Part shown: in pieces, positions 45,728 to 57,105 of the stretch | Numbering within the stretch: the first letter of the stretch is position 1 | Layout of the letters: the number at the start of each line of letters is the position of its first letter | Assembly (NCBI RefSeq): GCF_964204645.1 | Contig: NC_134031.1 | Location: forward strand, 3,286,001 to 3,350,000 | Reading direction: 5' to 3' | Source: Tubulanus polymorphus | Taxonomy: Eukaryota; Animalia; Nemertea | DNA length: 64,000 nucleotides | The notes under the pieces: model-generated | The model's database searches: none | What the model saw: the letters and a program-made list of their open reading frames with translations, nothing else | What the model was told of the DNA's origin: nothing | Position numbers and translations under genes: made by a program

Positions 45728-46777
45728 TCAAAATAAACGTTTCGTTAGAATAGTTTTTACTTCTGCTCGAAATGGTTTTAACATAACGATATACACTACG
45801 AAATTCAGACAGTTGTTCAGGGCGAAAATAAAATAACTCATGTCGTACAAACGACCGAGAAAATTCAATGTCGTTTGATGGATGCAAGCACCCGTTTCCT
45901 TGTATTGGACCTCACAACTATTAGAAATAGCGAAGAACAGCGGCGAAAGTACCGCAACCGGAGTCGTACAAACTAAACACAGCGTACAAATTGTCATTTG
46001 ATTCAAGAGACATCGGTTTTCATCGCTTCTAGTTTGGACTGATTTCGCTTTTCGAATTCCGGTCTTTCTTTGGTGGAACAAACCAGCGATAAGAATTACA
46101 TTGATGACGAGCAATAGCCCCGTTTCTCCGCTAGAACGAACTAACGGACTGTACCAACCTGCCAACCAATTGGGGATCAGTTTTGGGTCGATGTCACAGA
46201 ATTTGAACGGAGAGTCATACGTGATGAACCCGACGGTAAAAAGTAAATCTATATTCAAGAGTATCCCGGCGATTACAACAGATATAAGTATGTATTTGCG
46301 TTTCGACGTTGTAAAATAGTATCTGGCCTTCAGTGGAAACCAGGTAACCAGACAACGTTCGGCAGAGAAAGCAGATAAAGTAAGAAAAGACACAACGACA
46401 AAAGCCCAGCGAAGGAAAAACACAATTTTACAAGCGTTGATTGTCCACGTATTAATTGGAGAATATGCATCGACACGGTGTTTAGTAAAATCGAGTAAGT
46501 AATAGGGCCAATCGCACAAGAAACTACATAAGATGCCCACCGCATCGGCAGCCGACAGGACAAACAGGTATTGCGCCGTGGCTACTTCCGTTCGCTTGAT
46601 CATACGCGGGAAGATGAATACGGCAGCCGTATTACCGAGAATACCGACAGCGTAGAAAGCGGGACCGATGAATGAAAGAACGCCAGTCGGAGTCCAGTTG
46701 AATCGGGAAACGTCTACTCTGTTGTTCGTTGATGGTTGAATAGAAGTGATGCGCACAGACAAATTGAATGTATGCAT
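45728..46777 (-). CDS. Intronless class A (rhodopsin-like) peptide-receptor-like GPCR
   Basis: TM1 GILGN, TM2 LSAAD, TM3 C...SAERCLVTWFPL, TM6 CTTP, TM7 NNCLNFVVY, helix 8 FRAE. First ATG at 46777. Confidence 0.9.
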   Translation of the reverse strand: MHTFNLSVRITSIQPSTNNRVDVSRFNWTPTGVLSFIGPAFYAVGILGNTAAVFIFPRMIKRTEVATAQYLFVLSAADAVGILCSFLCDWPYYLLDFTKHRVDAYSPINTWTINACKIVFFLRWAFVVVSFLTLSAFSAERCLVTWFPLKARYYFTTSKRKYILISVVIAGILLNIDLLFTVGFITYDSPFKFCDIDPKLIPNWLAGWYSPLVRSSGETGLLLVINVILIAGLFHQRKTGIRKAKSVQTRSDENRCLLNQMTICTLCLVCTTPVAVLSPLFFAISNSCEVQYKETGACIHQTTLNFLGRLYDMSYFIFALNNCLNFVVYIVMLKPFRAEVKTILTKRLF

Positions 46778-47270
46778 CTTCAAGTAAAAATCAATAAACT
46801 CCAAGTGAATCTCTGAACAACATTGGCTCAGTTATAATTATGTAATGACTATTTATTAAGGATGTATTTGCAGTTGTGTATATAGGTTGCGAACGTCATT
46901 GATTTTATCATCATTTATTTATAAACTAAAACACTTTTTCGTAGATATTTTCATAGTGTGATAAATGTTTGATACAATTTGCGTACCACAATGCATATCA
47001 GCAGTTGAGGGAAAGAACATGAAATACTTCCGGGTAATACTTCCGGTGTCGCGATGTTCGCTCGCGTTTCAAAAATTCTACGTTAAAATTGGTCGAAAAT
47101 CCGAGTCTCAACTTTATTCCGTTAGCGGATTTGTATCTCACCTACTTGTTGGTACTTTCTCGTTGTGCGCAGTGCGTATTTCGTCTGCCTTGTTGGCCGG
47201 TTTATGATATATTATTACTTTCTTGGATCCTTGCTGCTCGAGCAATAACGAGTCAACGAAACAAAACAAA

Positions 47271-49301
47271 ATGGCGCCGAAACTCTACTTCTTCGCCGTC
47301 GCCGTCGGCCGTCGTGTTGGCATCTTTACGGACTGGTACATTTGTGAAGAGAGCGTCTCAGGTTACTCAGGTAGTACCCACAAAAAGTTTAATTGTATTA
47401 ACCTTGCGTGTTCCTTCCTGAACGACGCCGGTCTCTGCACCAAGGATATTTTAGTGCATGAGGCTGACACGATCGGCGCCGTCAAGTCGGTAAGTGTTTC
47501 GGACTTCTGTTACTCCCGTAATATGCAGCCACCTATGACTCACATCACTCCTGCCGAGGCTGTACCGTTACCGAGCTCCTGTGACGATGATCTAGACAGT
47601 GCCTGTGAAAATGGTCCGGTCAGTATCTGTGAACCGGTCTCTCAGCAACTGGAAAACCCACTCGCCTGTTTTTGCGGGAAGCCTGATACTGAGCTGATGA
47701 TCGGTTGCCACTACTGTAAATGTTGGATCCATTTCTCCTGTTCAAAACTTCCAGTGTACCAGCTGTTTTTACTTTGTAACACTACGCGTAAGTTCCAGTG
47801 CGAGCTGTGTACACAGGTTGACCCTGACTTCCAAACTGGCGATCTGAGTTCTGCCGGTGTGCCTCGATGTGACGTTGCTGTCCAGTCCGTACCTGTCTCC
47901 GTTTCCCAGGGTACATCACCTGAGGTTGTACTGGGCTCCCCCGTGAACCAGGAGTCCTCACACCCGTTGCAAGATATGATTCGTGACTTGGAGTCGCGCT
48001 TTGTGGATAAACTGTTAAACGCGTCTAGTGAGAACGAATCTCTAAAGCGAAAATTCCTGGACTCCGAGCTGTCCGCTGCCAACAAGCGTATTAAAGAACT
48101 ATCAACCGCCTTGCGCTCCTCGAATGATAAATGCGAGGCTCTCGAGAGCCGCCTCATTGGTCTCTGTGACAAACTTTTGTCTATGCCGTTCGATCGTTCA
48201 ACTTGCGACCAGTGTGCTCTGCTGAATTCCCGCTGCGCTGACCTGGAACACAGTCTGAATAAAGCTAACTCCTTGAGTGACAGTGCCATTGCTGAATCGG
48301 CCATGTTAAAGCTTTCTCTTGGCTCGAGCCAAGAGGAGCTCACAACTGCGAGGTCCGACCTCCTGCGTAGGAATGAACGTATTGAGTCCCTAGAAAAGGA
48401 CCTGCGGGATGCTACTGCTAAAATCGGTTCGCTTAAGGATGAGGTTCTCTCGCTCAAGACCTCCCTACATGCTAATTCGGATCCGCGCCCGTTTGTATCA
48501 GCAAACCCAGTGAACGGTGTTCCGCGTAGAGGTGTTGATGTCCTGGTTGTGGGAAACTCTCACACCAAACCGCTTAACTCGTCTCGTCTCTTCCCGCAGA
48601 TGAGGACTCAAATCAAATCGCTTGCCGACAAGACCATCAGTGGTGCGTTCGATTTCGTGAAAAACTATCCGCAGGATGACAACATCCAGTCGATTATTTT
48701 ACATGTATGTGATAACACCCTTGCGTCCCATACCGTCGAGGAGACTTCTACACAACTAAAAGACCTCGTCGTCTTATGTGCTTCTACCTTTCCGCATGCG
48801 AAGATTTACGCGGTGCATGTGTTGCCTCGCTGCCTCACTTCCAGCCAGCAAACCGAAGCCTACATGAAGAAGGTTGATCTATTCAACGCGAATATTTCTA
48901 ACCTAGGCTGTTCCGCCATCACTCTGCCGCCCGAACTTAGCGCGATTTCTGATGAATTCTTCTGTAGTGACCGCATCCACCTGAACCGCAAAGGTGTCTG
49001 GTCCCTAGTTAACCGCTACCGTGTTTCGATTATGGGTTCAACGTTGAACTCTCGTCCAACTGATCATCCTACTGATGCCGCTCATACGTTCCAGCCCAGA
49101 AACCGACCTACTTCAACATCCTCTCGTAATCCTGATCGACGCGCTCCAAATCCGGTTTTTAACAAGCGCTCATTCAATTATCGCTCGAACCCGGTCCGTA
49201 ACGGTACTGGTAACTTCAGTAACAACTACAGTTCGTTCTCTGGTGAAATCGTTCACCAGCTCGGAAATTTGCTGCAATCTGTTTTCAGGGACCGTCGCTA
49301 G
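47271..49301 (+). CDS. LINE ORF1: RNase H1 N-terminal-type hybrid-binding domain, PHD finger, coiled coil, SGNH esterase
   Basis: FFAVAVGRRVGIFTDWYICEESVSGYSGSTHKKF; CFC...CHYCKCWIHFSC...CELC; long heptad region; VLVVGNSH...LHVCDN...DRIHLN. Confidence 0.85.
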   Translation: MAPKLYFFAVAVGRRVGIFTDWYICEESVSGYSGSTHKKFNCINLACSFLNDAGLCTKDILVHEADTIGAVKSVSVSDFCYSRNMQPPMTHITPAEAVPLPSSCDDDLDSACENGPVSICEPVSQQLENPLACFCGKPDTELMIGCHYCKCWIHFSCSKLPVYQLFLLCNTTRKFQCELCTQVDPDFQTGDLSSAGVPRCDVAVQSVPVSVSQGTSPEVVLGSPVNQESSHPLQDMIRDLESRFVDKLLNASSENESLKRKFLDSELSAANKRIKELSTALRSSNDKCEALESRLIGLCDKLLSMPFDRSTCDQCALLNSRCADLEHSLNKANSLSDSAIAESAMLKLSLGSSQEELTTARSDLLRRNERIESLEKDLRDATAKIGSLKDEVLSLKTSLHANSDPRPFVSANPVNGVPRRGVDVLVVGNSHTKPLNSSRLFPQMRTQIKSLADKTISGAFDFVKNYPQDDNIQSIILHVCDNTLASHTVEETSTQLKDLVVLCASTFPHAKIYAVHVLPRCLTSSQQTEAYMKKVDLFNANISNLGCSAITLPPELSAISDEFFCSDRIHLNRKGVWSLVNRYRVSIMGSTLNSRPTDHPTDAAHTFQPRNRPTSTSSRNPDRRAPNPVFNKRSFNYRSNPVRNGTGNFSNNYSSFSGEIVHQLGNLLQSVFRDRR

Positions 49302-49501
49302 GCTCTTTTCGTGGTGCTCCCTACGTGTAGTATTCAACTTATTTTCAGTTACTTAAATCCTGTTACTCATTACTAGTTTGTATATCCTTTCGCGTTATTT
49401 TATCTGTTCTATTGATATTGTGTGCTTTTATCCTATTCTAGCTTTTGTGTATAATTGGTGTGTTCTCGGATTTTCCTCCTCTTATTTGGTCTCATTTATT
49501 C

Positions 49502-52500
49502 ATGTCACCCTCGAAATTTCTTAGCAGAATTAGTTGTGGTTTTTGGAATGTTGATGGCCTCCACAGCAGAATTGCTGGCCATCGCACATGTAAACTATCA
49601 AATGTTGATATTCAAAGTATTATCTGTAAATACGATATTTTTGGGCTTGTGGAGACACACTGTTCAAAAGATGATATTCTAGACTTTGAGGGCTACAAAA
49701 TTTTCCAAAACATCCGTCCGCGAAGTAAAAACGCCTCCCGCAATTATGGTGGTACTGCTATTCTTATCAAAGACGAGATTAAGGAAGGGGTCAAGGTCCT
49801 CCCCGTCACTTCGAGTGAACTGTTATGGGTTCGGCTCTGTAAATCCTTTTTCAATCTAGAATATGATATCTTTTTAGCTGTGGTCTACATAAGCCCCCTT
49901 TCTTCCACGGCTTCTAAACTGGGTGACGATATTTTTGATCTCTTAGAAAGTGATCTAGCATTTTATTCGGCCAAGGGTCATTGTCTCCTCTTAGGCGATT
50001 TTAATGCCAAAACGGCTACCTACCCTGACTACTGTAGTGATATCCCTAACAACACTGATATCTCTGACTACATTGACCCGCTAGCTGATCAGGTTTTGCG
50101 TAGATACAATTCGGACAACCACCCTATTGATGCCCATGGTAAAAATCTGCTTAATCTGTGTAAAAACTCTAGCCTCCGTATATTAAATGGCCGTTGCCTG
50201 GGTGATACCTTAGGCTCCTTCACCTGTTACAGCCACTCTGGTTCTCCCAGTGTCATCGATTACTCTATCTGCTCGGTTGATATGTTGCCAATCATTGACC
50301 TGTTTCACGTAGACTCCCCCAACCTATACTCCATCCATTGTGTACTATCCACTGTTATCTCTGCGCGTTTTAGTGTCGAGCGTTCGGTTCCCTCCTCTAC
50401 TGACTCGCATCAAAATTCGTCTGTGAAGGTTATTTGGAACCGTGGTGACGATACGAAATTCATGGCTGCGCTCGCTTCCCATGACGTTTCGAAGGACATC
50501 TCATCTCTAACCAACAGTCAAGCTGACGTCAATAATAATGTCACCGATCTCTGTTCTATTTTTGATAAAGCCTGTCTGAAAGCTGGCATTAAGCGTAAAC
50601 GTCCTAACCAAGCTAAAGCGAGACCTCCACACCTCACTAGTCGTTCTAACAAATGGTTTGACTCTGAATGCTCCGCTCTCAAGAAAGAGATCCTGTCCCT
50701 TGCTCCTTGTCTTCGTAAACACCCTTATGACCACCGTTTGCTCTGTAGATTCCGTTTGTTGAAGAAGAAGTATAAAACCCTCCTAAATCGCAAAAAGTCG
50801 TCTTATAAAAACCTCATTCTCTCTCAGATGGAGCTACTCCGTTCCAAAGACCCCAGAGAATACTGGAATTTATTTGATAACCTAAGAAACATTGACAAAC
50901 CCTCGTTTAAGTCTAATATAAGTTTAGCCCAGTGGTCAAGTCACTTCACTAGTCTCCTTAATACCTCTCTTGGCAACATTCATCCTCTCTCCGAAAATAG
51001 AATTGAATCCATACTAGCCTGCCATAATCATTCTACGTCGCCCCTGAACCACGAGATTTCCTTCAATGAAATCTCCTCTGCTATCTCAAAACTCAGGTGT
51101 GGCAAAGCCCATGGCACTGATAATATATGTAACGAAATGATTAAGGCTGGCCATAGCCTATTGCTCCCTGTACTCCATAAAATCTTTAACCAAATTCTGT
51201 CGACCAGTGTTTTTCCTGACCCCTGGCGCTGTAATATCCTTCACCCTGTTTTCAAAAAGGGGGACAGAAATCTTTGTTCTAATTATCGGGGTATTGCTGT
51301 CAGTAGCAATCTATGTAAACTTTTTTGTAGTGTTCTCCATCAACGCCTTTATGACTTTTCACTTACCAACCATCTCATCCCTCAGTGCCAAATTGGTTTC
51401 CAGAAAGGTATGCGCACTGCCGACCACATATTAACCCTTAAAACAATCATTGACAAATATATCAAAAAACTCTCTAAACAAAAACTCTACTGCTGCTTTG
51501 TCGACTTCCGGTCTGCTTTTGACTCCATCCAACGTACTGCCCTTCTATCTAAATTGTCTCAACTGGGCATAGGTGGTAAATTTCTATCTGTTATTGAAAA
51601 TATTTATTCTGATGTGAAATATGTAGTAAAAAGCAACGGTGATTTTAGCTCTGTCATCGGTTCCAATGTTGGTGTCAAACAAGGTTGTGTACTAAGTCCT
51701 ATCCTGTTTAATTTATTTATAAGTGATCTTCCCCTTATCTTTGACGAATGTGACCCGGTTTCCTTACATGATGTAGATATAAACTGCTTACTTTATGCCG
51801 ACGACCTTGTCATTATTAGCAAATCCCACTCTGGTTTACAGTGTGCCCTTAATAAACTGGCCCTTTATTGTAATATGTGGGGTCTATCTGTTAACCTTGC
51901 CAAAACTAAAATAATTATATTCAATAAGGGGGGTCGGATCATCAGCAAACTTTCTTTCTTCTATTCAGGCTCTCCAATTGAAATTGTCAACAGCTATTGC
52001 TATCTAGGTATCACGTTCACTCCTTCTGGTAAATTTAATAATGCATGTGACCTCCTGCTTGAACGTGCTTCTAAGGCCCTATTTAAATTAAAAACTATTA
52101 ATATCAGGGATTGTGTCTCTACTGCATATTTTCTCTTTAACAGCCTTATCCGTCCCATTATCGGTTATTGTACTGAGGTCTGGTGTTCCTTCTTTGTTTC
52201 CAAGCTGGAACCTTCTAATTTTTATAACACCTGTAACTCTCTGCCCTGCGAAAAGCTTTATCTGAACTTTGGCAAATACTTACTTGGTGTCAACAAAAGG
52301 TCCGTTAATGCGGCTGTTCGCGGCGACTTAGGCCAGTACCCCTTGCTTATATCATTTATTCCCCTGATGGTTAAATTTTGGTTTCGTCTTTGTAAATTGA
52401 ATCCCGCCTCATTAGTGTATAAATCCTATCTGGACTGTGTGCAAAGTATGGACACACTCCCAAATTGGTGTTCTGGAATTTTTTCAATACTAAAATCATT

Positions 52501-53047
52501 TGACCTTCATGGTGTTTGGTCTAATCATGGCTCCAACCACCCCAATAAAATTATCAAGCTGCTCCAGTCTAAAATGTATCTCTTTTATTCTTCTTCGTGG
52601 CTATTTCAAATAAACGACAGTAATTCCAACCCCAAATTAAGGACTTATAAACTTTTTAAAAAACGCTTTGAACTAGAAAAATATATTATTTCGAACTCTT
52701 TCCTTAAAAGACGCGAATTTTCCAAACTGCGTCTCGGTTCCCATCGGCTTAGAATCGAGACGGGGCGTCACTGTCGTCCATTTTTACCAGCCAATGAGAG
52801 ATTTTGCCTCTACTGTACTGTAAATAAAGTCGTTGAGGACGAATCCCACTTTTTACTCGAGTGTCCCTCGCTTCATCCTGCCAGAGTCTCCATTTTATCC
52901 TCACTTGTATGTTTCACAGAGTTTGAGTCTTTTTGTGTTTTCGATAAATTCCTATTTTTGATGTCCTATAACAACGGAGACTATGAAATTGCCAGCCTTA
53001 TGTGTAACCTAGTTAACTCTTTATTTGCCCTCCGTTCAACACTTTGA
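49502..53047 (+). CDS. LINE ORF2: apurinic-like endonuclease + reverse transcriptase + C-terminal zinc-knuckle-like motif
   Basis: WNVDGL, GLVETH, GDFNA, SVIDY; NYRGI, QIGF, FVDFRSAFDS, GVKQGCVLSP, YADD, YCYLG. Confidence 0.95.
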   Translation: MSPSKFLSRISCGFWNVDGLHSRIAGHRTCKLSNVDIQSIICKYDIFGLVETHCSKDDILDFEGYKIFQNIRPRSKNASRNYGGTAILIKDEIKEGVKVLPVTSSELLWVRLCKSFFNLEYDIFLAVVYISPLSSTASKLGDDIFDLLESDLAFYSAKGHCLLLGDFNAKTATYPDYCSDIPNNTDISDYIDPLADQVLRRYNSDNHPIDAHGKNLLNLCKNSSLRILNGRCLGDTLGSFTCYSHSGSPSVIDYSICSVDMLPIIDLFHVDSPNLYSIHCVLSTVISARFSVERSVPSSTDSHQNSSVKVIWNRGDDTKFMAALASHDVSKDISSLTNSQADVNNNVTDLCSIFDKACLKAGIKRKRPNQAKARPPHLTSRSNKWFDSECSALKKEILSLAPCLRKHPYDHRLLCRFRLLKKKYKTLLNRKKSSYKNLILSQMELLRSKDPREYWNLFDNLRNIDKPSFKSNISLAQWSSHFTSLLNTSLGNIHPLSENRIESILACHNHSTSPLNHEISFNEISSAISKLRCGKAHGTDNICNEMIKAGHSLLLPVLHKIFNQILSTSVFPDPWRCNILHPVFKKGDRNLCSNYRGIAVSSNLCKLFCSVLHQRLYDFSLTNHLIPQCQIGFQKGMRTADHILTLKTIIDKYIKKLSKQKLYCCFVDFRSAFDSIQRTALLSKLSQLGIGGKFLSVIENIYSDVKYVVKSNGDFSSVIGSNVGVKQGCVLSPILFNLFISDLPLIFDECDPVSLHDVDINCLLYADDLVIISKSHSGLQCALNKLALYCNMWGLSVNLAKTKIIIFNKGGRIISKLSFFYSGSPIEIVNSYCYLGITFTPSGKFNNACDLLLERASKALFKLKTINIRDCVSTAYFLFNSLIRPIIGYCTEVWCSFFVSKLEPSNFYNTCNSLPCEKLYLNFGKYLLGVNKRSVNAAVRGDLGQYPLLISFIPLMVKFWFRLCKLNPASLVYKSYLDCVQSMDTLPNWCSGIFSILKSFDLHGVWSNHGSNHPNKIIKLLQSKMYLFYSSSWLFQINDSNSNPKLRTYKLFKKRFELEKYIISNSFLKRREFSKLRLGSHRLRIETGRHCRPFLPANERFCLYCTVNKVVEDESHFLLECPSLHPARVSILSSLVCFTEFESFCVFDKFLFLMSYNNGDYEIASLMCNLVNSLFALRSTL

Positions 53048-54027
53048 TTCTTTTATATTATATTCACTTGATTGTATCGCCACCTAGTTTCCTTGCTGTA
53101 ATATTATATTTTGTTTTACGTTTAACATATTTTATTTGTAAATATTCTCTATTCCTATGTTATCCATTATAAAAGCGATTTTAAATGTATGTCCACTCTT
53201 GTACTGTTTTCCCTGTGTCTTGATGTTAATATTTTATTGCTTGTCATTTCCTATGTAACTTGTGTATTATATGGAGCAATAAAATGAAAGTTCAAGTTCA
53301 AGTTCAAGTTCATGAAAATGAAATGTGTTACACTCCATTTTGGCCTGACACTATGCCAAAACTACCCAAATGAGAGAGTCTTTGCCTGGGCATTTCATGG
53401 CAATCTCAAAATTAGCAAGAACATTTAATCATAATCTGTGATATACTCTCACTAGTTGCTATAAAACTGTAAGATTCAATTGATAAATTGTTTGAAATAA
53501 AAATGTTCATCATGGCATTAGGTTCTTCTCGCATTCCTAAATTAAAATTCACAACCGAACTGCCGTTTTGAGAACAATACACGTGTATTAGGTCTATTCC
53601 GTATGACAAGCATGGTTACTTGGCATACTCAGAGGTGATAATTTCTTATGGATTCAGAGATAAATAATTAACGGTCCGGCTCCCGGCCCGACAGTTTAGT
53701 TTTGATATAGGGATCGCTCCCGCCTTGGTGTGATATTTTCGGAGCTACCCTCTATGGTACCAAAAAAGTATAACTTTTCTCGGCTCCAGTGTTCTTTATG
53801 TTTTTATCTTTAAAAACTATTGGTTCACTTTACTATTATTTTTTCAAATCATATGTTAATGATGTTTACTAAGTTGTACATAACATGAAAATTACACACA
53901 ATAAAAAGTAAATTGAATTGAATGGTAAAGAGTCCGGGGAAAACCCAAAAAACTTCCGGGTTGTGATATTTTGTAATCAATGTCGTTGTGTTTTTCGGTC
54001 CTATATTAATTAGTTTAACGAACAATA

Positions 54028-57000
54028 ATGCGGCTTGTAATTTCATGCGGTAGCCACCTATATGATGTGGGCACGGTGTGTTTGAAGAATGGATATTTGC
54101 CGTCTATATGTGACTACAGCCCTGTCAATTCTGGTACGAATGGAATTAACGACAAATTAAAATAAAATTTATTCAATCTTATTCGACGAAGAAGGTTGCT
54201 TTCGTTAACCAAACCGATAAACTTGACACGTTCACCAAACCCACAAAACAATATAGTGGCTTGATGCAACTCGTCCATCCTCTTATAGCAATATTAATTT
54301 CATTCTCAATTCGTAGTGTGTACTAATACTAAGGCCAAGGGTCACACAGTTCCACAGATTGTGAGTTAAATTTTGATTCGGAGTTAACTCTTCAAAAATG
54401 AACTGATTTTAACTCTAACTCTCTAACTATGGAACAGAACTGAACCCAGACCAATTTCACAGGATAATCAGCCCCCCATCCAATAGTTCACTGATGCTGT
54501 ACTTTTAACTAATTTAATTATGTAACCTTTCATTCATGTTTTAGACAATCTTCCGGAAATCGAGCCGGCTCAATGGTTTAAAGTGGAAGTATTTCCGATG
54601 ATGCTGATCGACTGCAACAACCTGACGGTGAAACTCGACGTCGAGACCACTGTCGCGTTGGAAGACGTCGACGATATCGAAGTTTTGACGCTGAGACAAA
54701 TTTCAACGGACGACACGTGCGAGGCCGAATACGACCTCGCCGAACTGTTCCGCGTGATTCCCGATTTACCGTTACATTCCGACCGACCGGCTGATCGAGC
54801 AGAGGTCAATAAAATTCTGTTACGTTATTTACACTTTTACATTCTGCCGTTAGTCCGCCTGTTGCCCGGGGACGAGACGAACGTGAGAAAAGTCAGCGAA
54901 AATTTGAACGCGCATTTGACGCGTATAAACGATGATTTGCAGGCGCGTTGTCGCGAAATCGTCGGCACGAAACAGGCGGTCGCCGAAAAGCGCGAACGCA
55001 TGGTTCAAGAATTGCAGGACGCAAAATGCGCGCGCGAATACCCGCACGAGCTTCTGTTGCTGTTAGAAGCTCAGCTACTCGAAGATATCAATGGGGAAGA
55101 GAGAACGTTGGCTTTGCTGCTCTCAGATGTGAATTCTCTGAAAAAACGGGATTCTTCGAGCGGGTTGCCAGATAAACGAATTTCCCGCGACGTCTGCCAG
55201 GAGCGGCTCGTGGCGTTGGTGAACGCGCGCGAGAATATCGTCAGCGCGTTGACCGTCGCGCGTAAAGCCGCGCAGCAGAAACGCCGGTGGTCTCGTACGC
55301 GACAGAAGTTCGGCGCCGACGCCGAACACGCCATGTACATGCAGGTGTTCGATTTTCTGCAGGAGCAGCGGAAAAAACGCGCGACCTTGAATCGACGCAA
55401 GGACTTCGTGTTAAGCGTGCGCGCGGCCGTCGACGAAACGCTGAAAAAGCTGCGCGGCGGCGAAGAAACGCTCGGCGTCGTCAACAATCGCAAGAACAGC
55501 CAACGCGCTACCGATATTTTACAATACGCGACGATACCGAACGAATGGCGTTCCGTATCCGATCAAGTCGCCGCGATCATGAACGACGTCGATCACGACC
55601 TACGACGTAAACACGACGCGTTCGTACGAACGGTCGTCGATGAGTGCGCGAAATTGTGCGACGAATTACGCGATCACCGATCGTCGGTCGGTCCCGAGAA
55701 TAGACCGACGCGTCGACAGTCGTTTCGTAACGAGATGCAGTCGTTAGTGCTCGATTCGAGCGAATCCGACCCGGTCAGAGACGCCGTATTCAGCTCGATC
55801 AAAACACGTTCGCCGTCGCTCGAATCGATCGGTTTAGTCGTCGTTAATCCGTCTGCCGTCGAGGTGATGAAACGCGTCGACGTGATCGAACGCTCGAAAA
55901 AGTCGCTGAAGCTTTTACAGGAATGCGTACACGCTCATTTCGACTTGATGTGTTCGGAATTTCAGGTGGCGATCGATACGATGCACTGCACCGTTTACTA
56001 CAAAGTCTGGTTGTGCTACGAGGTTTATTTCTATGAGCAGACGATGTCGTCGTTGGCTGCCGCGTTCCGTCTCGTTTACGAGAACGTCTCCGAAAACTTG
56101 CGCTCGAGTCTCGACCTCGGGCAGATTTCGTACGAACAGCTCGGCATCCAGGAACCGTGGATTATCGATTTAGTCGCGCACGAGGACAACGTCAACGACG
56201 AGGTTTTCGAAGATAAACGGCGTAATTTGATTCGCGAAGATTCTAGAGAGGATATTTGCGATTCTAGCGATGTTGACGATCGATCGAAAATTCCTAGACC
56301 CGGCGATGATGAAATCGACGATAAGGTAAATGATGCGCACGTGGTATTATTACCGAATTCGGGGGTCGAGGATTCATCGGCCGAAGCGGCAGAAATTCTC
56401 GACGAAATCGTATCGAAACTGGAATTGAGTACGGGGGAGACGAGTTCAGCGGTTGAGCTTGTGTCTACGCGGTCTGCCGACCACAACGTCGCCGAAAATT
56501 TGTCGGTCTCACGATCGGGAACCGCGGTCGCTGGCCAGGTCAAAGTAATCAGCAATCAAATACGAGGTGCCGAAATGGATTCGTACGAATTGCAACGGCT
56601 CGCCGAGACGTTGCGTAGACCGCGCGAGCCGTATGGCAGCGACGCCGCGTTCAGCGGAGACCGACGCGTGCGCTCAATGCGCTGCGTGCCCAACTCGCGA
56701 ATGCGCGTATCGCGCGATCTCGATTCACGTCGATTCGAACGCGTGTTTCGACCGGCGATCGATTGCGCGCGGCGAATCGTCGACGAATCGACGCCAATGC
56801 ACAAACTGGAGTTGATGACGAAGTGCGTTCGTCTCGTGCAGCAAATCGTAACGACCGAACAGAGCAGACGCGTTTCGGCGGCGAAAACGCTGATGTGCTG
56901 CGATGATTTCTTGACGATCATGCCGTTGTTGTTATCGCACACCGGTCCCGATAAGATGGCTGAATTATACCCGCAAGTGACGCTACTCGTCGACTTCATG

Positions 57001-57105
57001 GCTCCGTTCTTATCGTCCGGAATTCACGCCAATTCGCTGACTCATTTCTACGGCGCTTACCACTTTATATTCTCCGTAATTCTGACGACGAAGGCAAAAG
57101 ACTAA
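54028..57105 (+). CDS. Coiled-coil + C-terminal VPS9-domain protein (putative Rab5-family GEF, VPS9D1-like), 2 coding exons
   Basis: Exon 54028-54133 (phase 1, lower confidence) joins 54545-57105. The C-terminal TPMHKLELM...MCCDDFLTIMPLLL...LLVDFM...GIHANSLTHF fits VPS9 motifs. Confidence 0.7.

What the first reader, a model, noticed from the sequence alone, without database searches (positions are those of the whole stretch)
47271..49301. LINE ORF1 carrying an RNase H1-type RNA:DNA hybrid-binding domain fused to PHD, coiled coil and SGNH esterase
Seen: ORF1 starts with FFAVAVGRRVGIFTDW..C...V.GY.G..HKKF, followed by a C4HC3 PHD, a long coiled coil and a GNS...DxxH esterase. Known: the first motif matches the hybrid-binding domain of eukaryotic RNase H1 and caulimovirus P6 (Cauli_VI). 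PHD and esterase modules are documented in non-LTR ORF1 proteins, but I do not know this hybrid-binding domain as a standard ORF1 module. No RNase H catalytic domain is recognisable in ORF2. Inference: ORF1p could bind the RNA:cDNA intermediate or genomic R-loops, either shielding it from host RNase H or, together with the PHD, steering insertion to transcribed chromatin.
Basis: partly seen in the sequence, partly recalled or inferred. Interest (0 to 1): 0.8.

Follow-up and report, generated by a model that had tools for sequence, protein, structure and literature searches.

The report
LINE ORF1 with RNase H1 hybrid-binding head
A young, intact jumping gene (LINE) starts its first protein with the small domain that RNase H1 uses to grip RNA:DNA duplexes; many invertebrate LINEs share this head, some with a complete RNase H1, and I found no paper describing it.

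Summary
ORF1 (47271-49301, 676 aa) belongs to a 6274-bp LINE (47039-53312). A second full-length copy is 99.8% identical, and there are at least 40 mostly 5'-truncated copies.

- **Hybrid-binding domain (HBD):** residues 6-51 score 43.7 bits on Pfam Cauli_VI (cut-off 21). The model overlays human HBD 3BSU at 0.6 A, and W22 and K38-K39 match human W43 and K59-K60.
- **Other domains:** a C4HC3 PHD finger, a coiled coil predicted to self-pair in parallel, and an SGNH esterase with S430, N482, D567 and H570 follow.
- **No RNase H:** neither ORF has a catalytic domain.

The architecture is not unique. About 47 of the top 150 cluster representatives share the HBD head. The best-scoring relatives carry a complete RNase H1 (HBD plus an intact catalytic domain) ahead of PHD, coiled coil and esterase. 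A decayed copy of that type lies in this genome.

The HBD is the most conserved ORF1 segment between the genome's two intact families.

Best reading (inferred): an ancestral ORF1 captured RNase H1, this lineage lost the nuclease, and it kept a multivalent clamp for the RNA:cDNA hybrid made during integration. The searchable literature does not describe an HBD or RNase H1 in LINE ORF1.

The parts
47039..53312 (+). Full-length non-LTR retrotransposon (LINE), 6274 bp
   Evidence: It aligns end to end with a second copy on G000:C5 at 99.825% identity (11 mismatches, no gaps). Both ORFs are open in both copies. A search with the 3' end gave 42 matches, most of them 5'-truncated, at 80-100% identity.
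47039..47270 (+). 5' UTR, starting with ACTTCCGGTG (reverse complement ACCGGAAGT, which I recall as ETS-site-like)
   Evidence: The start is set by where the two-copy alignment begins. The motif reading is from my own knowledge and was not tested.
47271..49301 (+). ORF1, 676 aa
47286..47423 (+). RNase H1-type hybrid-binding domain (HBD), residues 6-51. W22 and K38-K39 correspond to human W43 and K59-K60
   Evidence: Pfam Cauli_VI 43.7 bits. 1QHK and 3BSU matches. Fold match to 3BSU at rmsd 0.6 A. It is the most conserved ORF1 segment against the C8 family: 67% identity, dN 0.23.
47436..47525 (+). Beta-hairpin plus helix extension of the HBD, residues 56-85 (motif DILVH ... SDFC)
   Evidence: pLDDT 91-95. 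It is shared collinearly with the RNase H-bearing ORF1 relatives, upstream of their catalytic domain. It is not an RNase H relic.
47661..47840 (+). C4HC3 PHD finger, residues 131-190, with W152 before H154
47946..48485 (+). Coiled-coil region, residues 226-405. The modelled parallel dimer interface covers residues 312-402
   Evidence: Weak Pfam coiled-coil hits. Complex prediction score 0.51 against a best control of 0.11.
48540..49055 (+). SGNH esterase, residues 424-595 (G428-N-S430-H, N482, D567-x-x-H570)
   Evidence: Model pLDDT about 97 with 131 SGNH matches in the PDB. The catalytic residues are conserved.
49056..49298 (+). Arg/Asn/Ser/Pro-rich, low-confidence C-terminal tail, residues 596-676
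   Evidence: pLDDT 50-61 for the part that was modelled. Five of the 11 differences between the two copies fall here.
49445..53047 (+). ORF2: APE endonuclease (residues 34-283) and reverse transcriptase (residues 604-856), with no RNase H
   Evidence: Pfam Exo_endo_phos and RVT_1. PDB hits to L1 ORF2p and R2. The RNase H profile is negative.
53278..53312 (+). AATAAA followed by the (GTTCAA)3GTTCA tail
   Evidence: The same tail ends the truncated copies.

Best explanation
Shown:
- This is a recently active LINE whose ORF1 protein reads HBD head (with a 30-residue extension), PHD finger, coiled coil, SGNH esterase.
- Its ORF2 has an endonuclease and a reverse transcriptase but no RNase H.
- The same head module sits in front of a complete, catalytically intact RNase H domain in the ORF1 of the closest relatives and in a decayed copy in this genome.

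Inferred:
- An ancestral esterase-type ORF1 captured a whole RNase H1 (HBD plus catalytic domain). That let the element remove its own RNA from the RNA:cDNA hybrid made during target-primed reverse transcription.
- In this lineage the catalytic domain was deleted and the binding head was kept under strong constraint.
- The coiled coil pairs in parallel, so each ORF1p multimer presents two or more HBDs at one end. That would make a multivalent clamp for A-form RNA:DNA duplex.
- I propose that the clamp holds ORF1p, and with it the particle, on the nascent RNA:cDNA hybrid. It may also hold the short duplex formed when the RNA's GUUCAA tail anneals to the nicked target.
- RNA removal would then be left to cellular RNase H.
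For: Identity of the HBD:
- Sequence and fold matches are given.
- The residues whose mutation abolishes hybrid binding in the human domain (W43, K59-K60; PMC10639055) are present as W22 and K38-K39.

Constraint:
- All 37 aligned relatives hit Cauli_VI, and W22, G13 and G17 are at least 90% conserved.
- Against the second intact family in this genome the HBD is the best-kept segment. It shows 67% identity and dN 0.23, compared with 47% for the esterase, 42% for the coiled coil and 26-38% for the linkers.

Link to RNase H:
- P0002-P0011 carry Cauli_VI plus a full-length RNase_H match (E 1e-25 to 1e-32), followed by PHD, coiled coil and esterase.
- Their motifs VDGAC, TNNRAEL, RSDSxYV and GNxxAD are intact.
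- The extension after the HBD is collinear in both types.
- The HBD most similar to the window's in its own genome (55% identity) heads a decayed HBD-RNase H-PHD locus on C1.

LINE context of the relatives: an APE-RT ORF2 lies downstream of both P0006 and P0151.

Multivalency:
- A parallel in-register dimer model scores 0.51 against a best control of 0.11. The runs agree in at least 51% of contacts and partner pLDDT is at least 70. The mark was reached by 21 of 30 solved homodimers and 0 of 23 solved single chains.
- A single human HBD gives diffuse staining, whereas three in tandem give focal R-loop binding (PMC10639055).

The ligand exists: LINEs without RNase H form an RNA:cDNA hybrid and depend on cellular RNase H2 (PMC6068448).

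Tail annealing: about 13 of the 20 3' junctions continue with A or AG, the next bases of the tail repeat.

Recent activity.
Against: - No binding data exist for this protein.
- From my own knowledge (Cerritelli 1998, Nowotny 2008; not read here), the HBD fold also binds double-stranded RNA, less tightly. The ligand could therefore be structured LINE RNA.
- F8 and H37 replace the human aromatic residues Y29 and F58. Position 39 varies across the family (the consensus reads K-G-F rather than K-K-F).
- The direction of change (loss rather than gain of the nuclease) is inferred from the layout of cellular RNase H1. The esterase tree is unresolved.
- The coiled-coil model was folded without an alignment, and a pass may reflect generic coiled-coil geometry.
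- Expression was not shown. No RNA run holds the element.
Confidence: 0.5

Rival explanations
1. The HBD is the missing RNA-binding module of esterase-type ORF1p. It would grip double-stranded stems of the element's own RNA (for example a 3' UTR stem-loop) and so package the RNA in cis, with no role at the RNA:DNA hybrid.
For: Schneider et al. found no structured RNA-binding domain in any esterase-type ORF1p in Repbase and asked how these proteins join the RNP (PMC3905857). The HBD is the only nucleic-acid-binding fold in this ORF1. My own knowledge is that the domain was first described as a duplex-RNA binder.
Against: In the closest relatives the same head is fused to an active-looking RNase H, whose substrate is the hybrid. 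Many sister ORF1s work without any HBD, or with a J domain in the same position. The head is therefore an accessory, not the core packaging device. I did not look for a conserved RNA stem.
Confidence: 0.2
2. The HBD would recognise genomic R-loops and the PHD finger would read H3K4me3, so that together they steer insertions to active promoters.
For: The PHD is closest to H3K4me3-reading fingers such as Spp1, PHF13, PHF23, DIDO, BPTF, ING4 and TAF3, and it keeps W152. The window copy lies 235 bp upstream of a 7TM-like ORF on the other strand. Both full-length copies lie within 40 bp of the rare 12-mer ATACTTCCGGGT.
Against: Only 1 of 20 truncated copies has the CTTCCGG core within 300 bp of either junction. 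This test is weak, because the genome is not annotated. In the window copy the 12-mer may be a 13-nt duplication of the element's own 5' end rather than target DNA. The cage Trp of the PHD is replaced in several relatives. RNase H-bearing relatives would destroy the R-loop they were meant to read.
Confidence: 0.12
3. HBD-only ORF1p would coat the RNA:cDNA hybrid and keep cellular RNase H off it until reverse transcription is complete.
For: The catalytic domain was lost while the binding head was kept. A multivalent binder could compete with RNase H1.
Against: LINEs without RNase H need cellular RNase H activity to finish insertion (PMC6068448). The ancestral state delivered a nuclease to the hybrid. 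No data bear on timing.
Confidence: 0.08
4. The HBD is a functionless relic of a former RNase H1 head.
For: The catalytic partner is gone.
Against: The HBD is the most conserved ORF1 segment between two families whose synonymous sites are saturated. It is kept in dozens of 50%-identity clusters. It is unchanged between the two young copies.
Confidence: 0.04

Closest known systems
Esterase-type LINE ORF1p of the CR1, L2 and RTEX clades (Kapitonov and Jurka 2003; ZfL2-1 ORF1p, Schneider et al. 2013, PMC3905857)
   Same: Both have a PHD finger, a coiled coil in front of an SGNH esterase with conserved active-site residues, and an APE-RT ORF2 downstream. The long coiled coil, the lack of an Arg-rich motif between coil and esterase, and the esterase position match the RTEX rows of their Table S1.
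   Different: This ORF1 has an N-terminal HBD head. [quoted passage not shown] The modelled coiled coil is parallel, whereas the ZfL2-1 coil crystallised as an antiparallel dimer.
Hybrid-binding domain of eukaryotic RNase H1 (human 3BSU, yeast 1QHK; Pfam PF01693)
   Same: The fold matches (rmsd 0.6 A) and Trp and Lys-Lys sit at the positions needed for hybrid binding.
   Different: The domain here is not attached to a nuclease. It is followed by a structured 30-residue extension and sits in a transposon protein that multimerises.
LINEs that carry RNase H in ORF2, downstream of the reverse transcriptase. The I, Tad, LOA, Ingi and plant L1 examples are from my own knowledge; PMC6068448 describes the two classes of LINE
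   Same: The relatives of this element also encode their own RNase H.
   Different: In those relatives it is a complete RNase H1 (HBD plus catalytic domain) placed at the N-terminus of ORF1, not in ORF2. The window element has only the HBD.
Caulimovirus P6/TAV, the other founding member of Cauli_VI
   Same: It has the same small domain in a protein of a reverse-transcribing element, without an attached nuclease.
   Different: The rest of the protein is unrelated, and the viral protein is a translational transactivator (my own knowledge).
J-domain-headed LINE ORF1 in the same genome (earlier notes s1-511927 and s1-496744)
   Same: It has the same PHD-containing ORF1 body with a different small domain in the same N-terminal position. 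At C7:6677479-6679531 I confirmed DnaJ (29.8 bits, cut-off 27.8) followed by PHD.
   Different: The head recruits Hsp70 rather than binding nucleic acid. This suggests that the position in front of the PHD is a swap-slot for accessory heads.

Membership tests
RNase H1 hybrid-binding domain (Pfam PF01693 Cauli_VI) | Profile match above the curated cut-off | tested here: met
   43.7 bits against a cut-off of 21, E 3.2e-11. All 37 aligned relatives also hit the family.
RNase H1 hybrid-binding domain (Pfam PF01693 Cauli_VI) | Three-stranded sheet with two helices, superposable on a solved HBD | tested here: met
   Model strands 7-12, 17-19 and 36-40, helices 22-29 and 43-52, pLDDT 91-97. 3BSU matches with TM by target 0.91 and rmsd 0.6 A.
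RNase H1 hybrid-binding domain (Pfam PF01693 Cauli_VI) | Residues required for hybrid binding in the human domain (W43, K59, K60) | tested here: met
   W22, K38 and K39 align to them. Their role is stated in PMC10639055. Human Y29 and F58 are F8 and H37 here.
RNase H1 hybrid-binding domain (Pfam PF01693 Cauli_VI) | Preferential binding of RNA:DNA duplex | not testable with these tools
   This needs EMSA or anisotropy with recombinant protein.
RNase H1 enzyme | RNase H catalytic domain with the DEDD residues | tested here: not met
   No Pfam RNase_H hit at E<=1. A profile built from the ORF1-borne RNase H domains scores below zero on both ORFs. Only 80 residues lie between the HBD and the PHD.
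PHD finger | C4HC3 ligand spacing and PHD fold | tested here: met
   The ligands are C133, C135, C146, C149, H154, C157, C177 and C180. Spp1 PHD matches at E 5e-6. The fold matches DIDO, BPTF and ING4. Pfam PHD misses this copy but hits 20 of 37 relatives.
PHD finger, H3K4me3-reading subtype | Aromatic cage and peptide binding | tested here: inconclusive
   W152 is present and the nearest solved fingers are H3K4me3 readers. The aromatic residue before the first Cys is Ala here, and the Trp is not invariant in relatives.
SGNH/GDSL hydrolase | SGNH fold with a Ser nucleophile, an oxyanion Asn and a DxxH pair | tested here: met
   131 PDB matches at E<=1e-3, all SGNH enzymes. S430, N482, D567 and H570 are at least 90% conserved. 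Pfam Lipase_GDSL_2 misses this copy but hits 13 of 37 relatives.
Esterase-type LINE ORF1p | Coiled coil in front of the esterase, in the first ORF of an APE-RT element | tested here: met
   The layout matches Table S1 of PMC3905857.
RTEX clade of non-LTR retrotransposons | Placement of the RT domain in the RTEX clade by phylogeny (RTclass1/Repbase references) | not tested
   No labelled reference RT sequences were available, and the defining paper is not held. Only the ORF1 layout is RTEX-like.

The most novel reading that the evidence does not exclude
A broad lineage of invertebrate esterase-type LINEs moved the RNase H step of retrotransposition into ORF1 by capturing a whole cellular RNase H1. 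Derivatives such as this element then dropped the nuclease and kept a multivalent RNA:DNA-hybrid clamp. In that case ORF1p would act directly on the integration intermediate rather than only packaging RNA. It would be the first ORF1p with a defined nucleic-acid ligand at the reverse-transcription step, and the first structured nucleic-acid-binding domain in the esterase class.
Probability: 0.35. Interest if true: 0.8.

Novelty: new variant of a known kind. Interest (0 to 1): 0.62.

Why it matters
How esterase-type ORF1 proteins meet nucleic acid is an open question. It was stated explicitly in the only structural study of the class (PMC3905857). A conserved hybrid-binding head gives that question a concrete, testable answer.

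The relatives with a whole RNase H1 in ORF1 add a new route by which LINEs acquire RNase H. All cases I know of are in ORF2.

The pair of HBD-only and HBD-plus-nuclease elements is a natural experiment on whether a LINE needs its own RNase H or the cell's (PMC6068448).

The HBD, J-domain, NADAR and CCCH heads in the same position suggest a general slot for accessory domains in ORF1.

Tried and rejected
- **Word search:** the word-index protein search with full ORF1 gave nothing. The exhaustive search was needed.
- **RNase H relic idea:** I suspected that residues 56-85 (DILVH...) were a remnant of the first RNase H strand. A profile of the ORF1-borne RNase H domains finds no consistent match in 49 HBD-only N-termini. 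The alignment shows that the segment is a shared extension lying upstream of the nuclease. Rejected.
- **Esterase tree:** a tree built to ask whether the HBD was gained once was unresolved, and the careful search did not finish. Labels are scattered, and many 'esterase-only' rows may be truncated gene models. No conclusion drawn.
- **Promoter-motif test:** the 8-mer ACTTCCGG occurs 6075 times in the genome and the 12-mer ATACTTCCGGGT 63 times. Only 1 of 20 truncated copies has the core near a junction. This gives no support for promoter targeting.
- **Atlas searches:** the feature search with residues 1-200 gave no usable hit. The structure search returned only Cauli_VI proteins of bacteria and giant viruses at low TM.
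- **Expression:** no run on record as RNA holds the element. Read laying was not used, because the holders are of unknown kind and the element is longer than the 6000-letter limit. An empty site could not have been seen.
- **Papers not held:** Kapitonov and Jurka 2003 and Kapitonov et al. 2009. ORF2 was therefore not placed in a clade.
Full report
**The element**

The finding lies in a complete non-LTR retrotransposon at window 47039-53312.
- Its limits come from an end-to-end alignment with a second copy on G000:C5. That alignment covers 6274 bp at 99.825% identity, with 11 mismatches and no gaps.
- Both ORFs are open in both copies.
- ORF1 runs from 47271 to 49301 (676 aa). ORF2 runs from 49445 to 53047 (1200 aa).
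- ORF2 hits Pfam Exo_endo_phos and RVT_1 and the solved L1 ORF2p and R2 proteins.
- The element ends in AATAAA followed by (GTTCAA)3GTTCA.
- A search with the last 1 kb finds 42 matches at 80-100% identity, most of them 5'-truncated.
- Twenty truncated copies that I fetched end in the same tail. Several show 4-6 bp target duplications.
- This is therefore a low-copy family that has been active recently.
- The genome is a 268-Mb eukaryote assembly. Earlier notes of this scan call it a ribbon worm; I did not verify that.

Hybrid-binding domain (HBD):
- Pfam Cauli_VI matches residues 7-46 at E 3.2e-11 and 43.7 bits, against a cut-off of 21.
- The yeast RNase H1 N-domain 1QHK matches at E 6e-9 and the human HBD 3BSU at E 4e-4.
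- An AlphaFold model built on 21 homologues has pLDDT 91-97 over residues 1-85.
- Its best PDB match is 3BSU, with TM by target 0.91 and rmsd 0.6 A over 45 residues.
- W22 and K38-K39 align with human W43 and K59-K60. W43A and KK59/60AA are the substitutions known to compromise hybrid binding (PMC10639055).
- Human Y29 and F58 are F8 and H37 here.

PHD finger:
- The C4HC3 ligands are C133, C135, C146, C149, H154, C157, C177 and C180.
- The Spp1, PHF23 and PHF13 fingers match by sequence at E 5e-6 to 2e-3.
- The DIDO, BPTF, ING4 and TAF3 fingers match by fold.

Coiled coil:
- There are weak Pfam coiled-coil hits over residues 226-405.
- A two-copy model gives a parallel, in-register interface with heptad spacing over residues 312-402.
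- The score is 0.51 against a best control of 0.11. The runs agree in at least 51% of contacts and partner pLDDT is at least 70.
- That mark was reached by 21 of 30 solved homodimers and 0 of 23 solved single chains. The model supports self-association but does not show it.

Esterase:
- This copy has no sequence-level hit.
- The model (pLDDT about 97) has 131 PDB matches at E<=1e-3, all SGNH hydrolases. Sialate O-acetylesterase and PAF acetylhydrolase lead the list.
- S430, N482, D567 and H570 are at least 90% conserved across relatives.

RNase H catalytic domain: none is present in either ORF.

**The architecture is widespread**

- An exhaustive HMMER search of 1.84 billion cluster representatives found 630 proteins at E<=1e-3.
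- Among the top 150, about 47 combine an N-terminal HBD with the PHD and/or the esterase.
- All 37 that I aligned hit Cauli_VI. Twenty hit PHD, 13 hit Lipase_GDSL_2, 5 hit RNase_H and 2 hit NADAR.
- I looked up two on their contigs. Each has an APE and/or RT ORF2 directly downstream.
- An ESM Atlas cluster of 713-aa eukaryotic proteins is 100% Cauli_VI. It has 75 members, and the only member with a known phylum is a brachiopod.
- Two relatives are auto-named 'ribonuclease HI' by JGI/IMG.
- In the window's own genome there are 13 PF01693 matches. One set is an intron-split cellular RNase H1 gene on C2.
- Most of the others lie next to ORF1-like PHD, coiled-coil or esterase matches.
- One of these is a second family with an intact 734-aa ORF1 on C8, 43% identical to the window's.

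**The closest relatives carry a whole RNase H1**

- The best-scoring homologues, P0002-P0011, are ORF1 proteins of 900-1170 aa.
- They read HBD, full-length RNase_H (profile positions 3-140 of 141, E 1e-25 to 1e-32), PHD, coiled coil, esterase.
- Their catalytic motifs VDGAC, TNNRAEL, RSDSxYV and GNxxAD are intact.
- The ORF2 downstream of P0006 has no RNase H.
- The window protein's first 95 residues are collinear with theirs.
- The HBD is followed in both types by a structured beta-hairpin and helix (DI.V[HY] ... [DE][YF]C). This segment has pLDDT 91-95 in my model and precedes the start of the nuclease in the long forms.
- I first took this segment for a relic of the first RNase H strand. 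A profile test rejected that idea.
- In the window's genome, the HBD most like the window's (55% identity, the same GYSG..HKKF) heads a decayed HBD-extension-RNase H-PHD locus at C1:18419297-18420238.
- Cellular RNase H1 is itself HBD-linker-nuclease. The simplest history is therefore capture of a whole RNase H1 into ORF1, followed by deletion of the nuclease in this lineage. This is an inference, because the esterase tree is too poorly resolved to test it.

**The head is constrained**

- Between the two intact families of this genome, synonymous sites are saturated.
- The HBD is the best-conserved segment, at 67% identity and dN 0.23.
- The other segments are PHD 62%, esterase 47%, coiled coil 42% and linkers 26-38% with dN 0.84-1.1.
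- None of the 11 differences between the two young copies falls in the HBD. Five fall in the disordered C-terminal tail.

**Mechanism**

Shown:
- The domain identities and their conservation.
- The link to an ORF1-borne RNase H.
- The lack of any RNase H in this element.
- Recent activity of the family.

Established elsewhere:
- Target-primed reverse transcription makes an RNA:cDNA hybrid.
- LINEs without RNase H, including a zebrafish L2, depend on cellular RNase H2 to finish (PMC6068448).
- One HBD binds weakly and diffusely, whereas three in tandem give specific binding to hybrids in cells (PMC10639055).

Inferred:
- ORF1p multimers present two or more HBD heads at one end of a parallel coiled coil.
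- These heads clamp the nascent RNA:cDNA hybrid. They may also clamp the short duplex formed when the tail repeat of the RNA anneals to the nicked target.
- About 13 of the 20 3' junctions continue with A or AG, the next bases of the repeat.
- I put this reading at about 0.5.

Rival readings:
- Binding of double-stranded stems of the element's own RNA (0.2). This would answer the question raised by Schneider et al., who found no structured RNA-binding domain in any esterase-type ORF1p (PMC3905857).
- Shielding the hybrid from RNase H (0.08).
- A functionless relic (0.04).

Shielding sits badly with an ancestry in which the same head delivered a nuclease. Targeting got no support from a crude motif test, but that test is weak.

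**Comparison with what is known**

- The body of the protein (PHD, coiled coil, SGNH esterase) is the known esterase-type ORF1p of CR1, L2 and RTEX elements.
- Its long coiled coil, and the absence of an Arg-rich motif between coil and esterase, match the RTEX rows of Table S1 in PMC3905857.
- I could not place ORF2 in a clade, because no labelled reference sequences were available and the defining papers are not held.
- The new feature is the head.
- Seven full-text searches combining Cauli_VI, hybrid-binding domain or RNase H/H1 with ORF1, non-LTR, RTEX or esterase found no description of it.
- The main survey of ORF1 modules does not mention it (PMC4120745).
- Earlier notes of this scan report a J domain in the same position in other LINE ORF1s of this genome. 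At C7:6677479-6679531 I confirmed DnaJ at 29.8 bits (cut-off 27.8) followed by PHD.
- Together with the NADAR and CCCH heads among the relatives, this points to a swap-slot for accessory domains in front of the PHD.

**Verdict**

This is a new variant of a known kind: common in invertebrate assemblies, apparently undescribed, and directly testable. Interest is 0.62.

Noticed in passing
window 47024-47035 and G000:C5:20009999-20010010: The 12-mer ATACTTCCGGGT occurs only 63 times in the 268-Mb genome. It nevertheless lies within 40 bp of an end of each of the two full-length copies. It is upstream and forward in the window copy, and downstream and inverted in the C5 copy. The element itself starts with ACTTCCGGTG. 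In the window copy the 12-mer may belong to a 13-nt imperfect duplication of the element's 5' end. The C5 case is unexplained.
   Followed up: partly
window 45728-46804 (- strand): An intronless 358-aa ORF that looks like a seven-transmembrane receptor starts 235 bp from the LINE's 5' end, in divergent orientation. It was not checked against any family.
   Followed up: no
window 54583-57105 (+ strand): An 840-aa open frame lies 1.27 kb downstream of the LINE. It was not examined.
   Followed up: no
proteins P0010, P0013, P0030, P0074 and others: Among the hits are proteins made of 2 to 8 tandem hybrid-binding domains, some ending in an RNase H domain. They are natural multi-HBD arrays, reminiscent of the engineered three-HBD R-loop sensor.
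   Followed up: no
G000:C7:6677479-6679531 (L074:1798-3582, - strand): A LINE ORF1-like locus has a DnaJ domain (29.8 bits) in front of a PHD finger, as earlier notes of this scan reported. The frame is split into two ORFs here.
   Followed up: partly
G000:C2:24169868-24171841 (L076): This is the probable cellular RNase H1 gene, split by introns. The stretch after its HBD shows a faint resemblance to the extension seen in the LINE heads (I.V.E....G.V ... CY; tblastn E 6e-4 over residues 25-87). The extension may therefore have come with the captured gene.
   Followed up: partly
L054-L073 (3' junctions of truncated copies): The flank right after the GTTCA tail starts with A or AG in about 13 of 20 copies. 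This fits priming by annealing of the tail repeat to the target. Short target duplications (for example GTCAT, AGATCG, GTGA, TCAT) are visible.
   Followed up: partly
G000:C2:12558325-12559127 and G000:C20:110298-111100; also G000:C27:111498-116831: Identical HBD-ORF1 fragments sit on C2 and on the small contig C20, probably a haplotig or a segmental duplication. Two near-identical truncated copies lie 4.4 kb apart on C27 with the same flanks.
   Followed up: no
relatives in alignment A1: Two HBD-bearing ORF1 relatives also hit the NADAR domain (best E 9e-13), and one hits CCCH zinc fingers.
   Followed up: no
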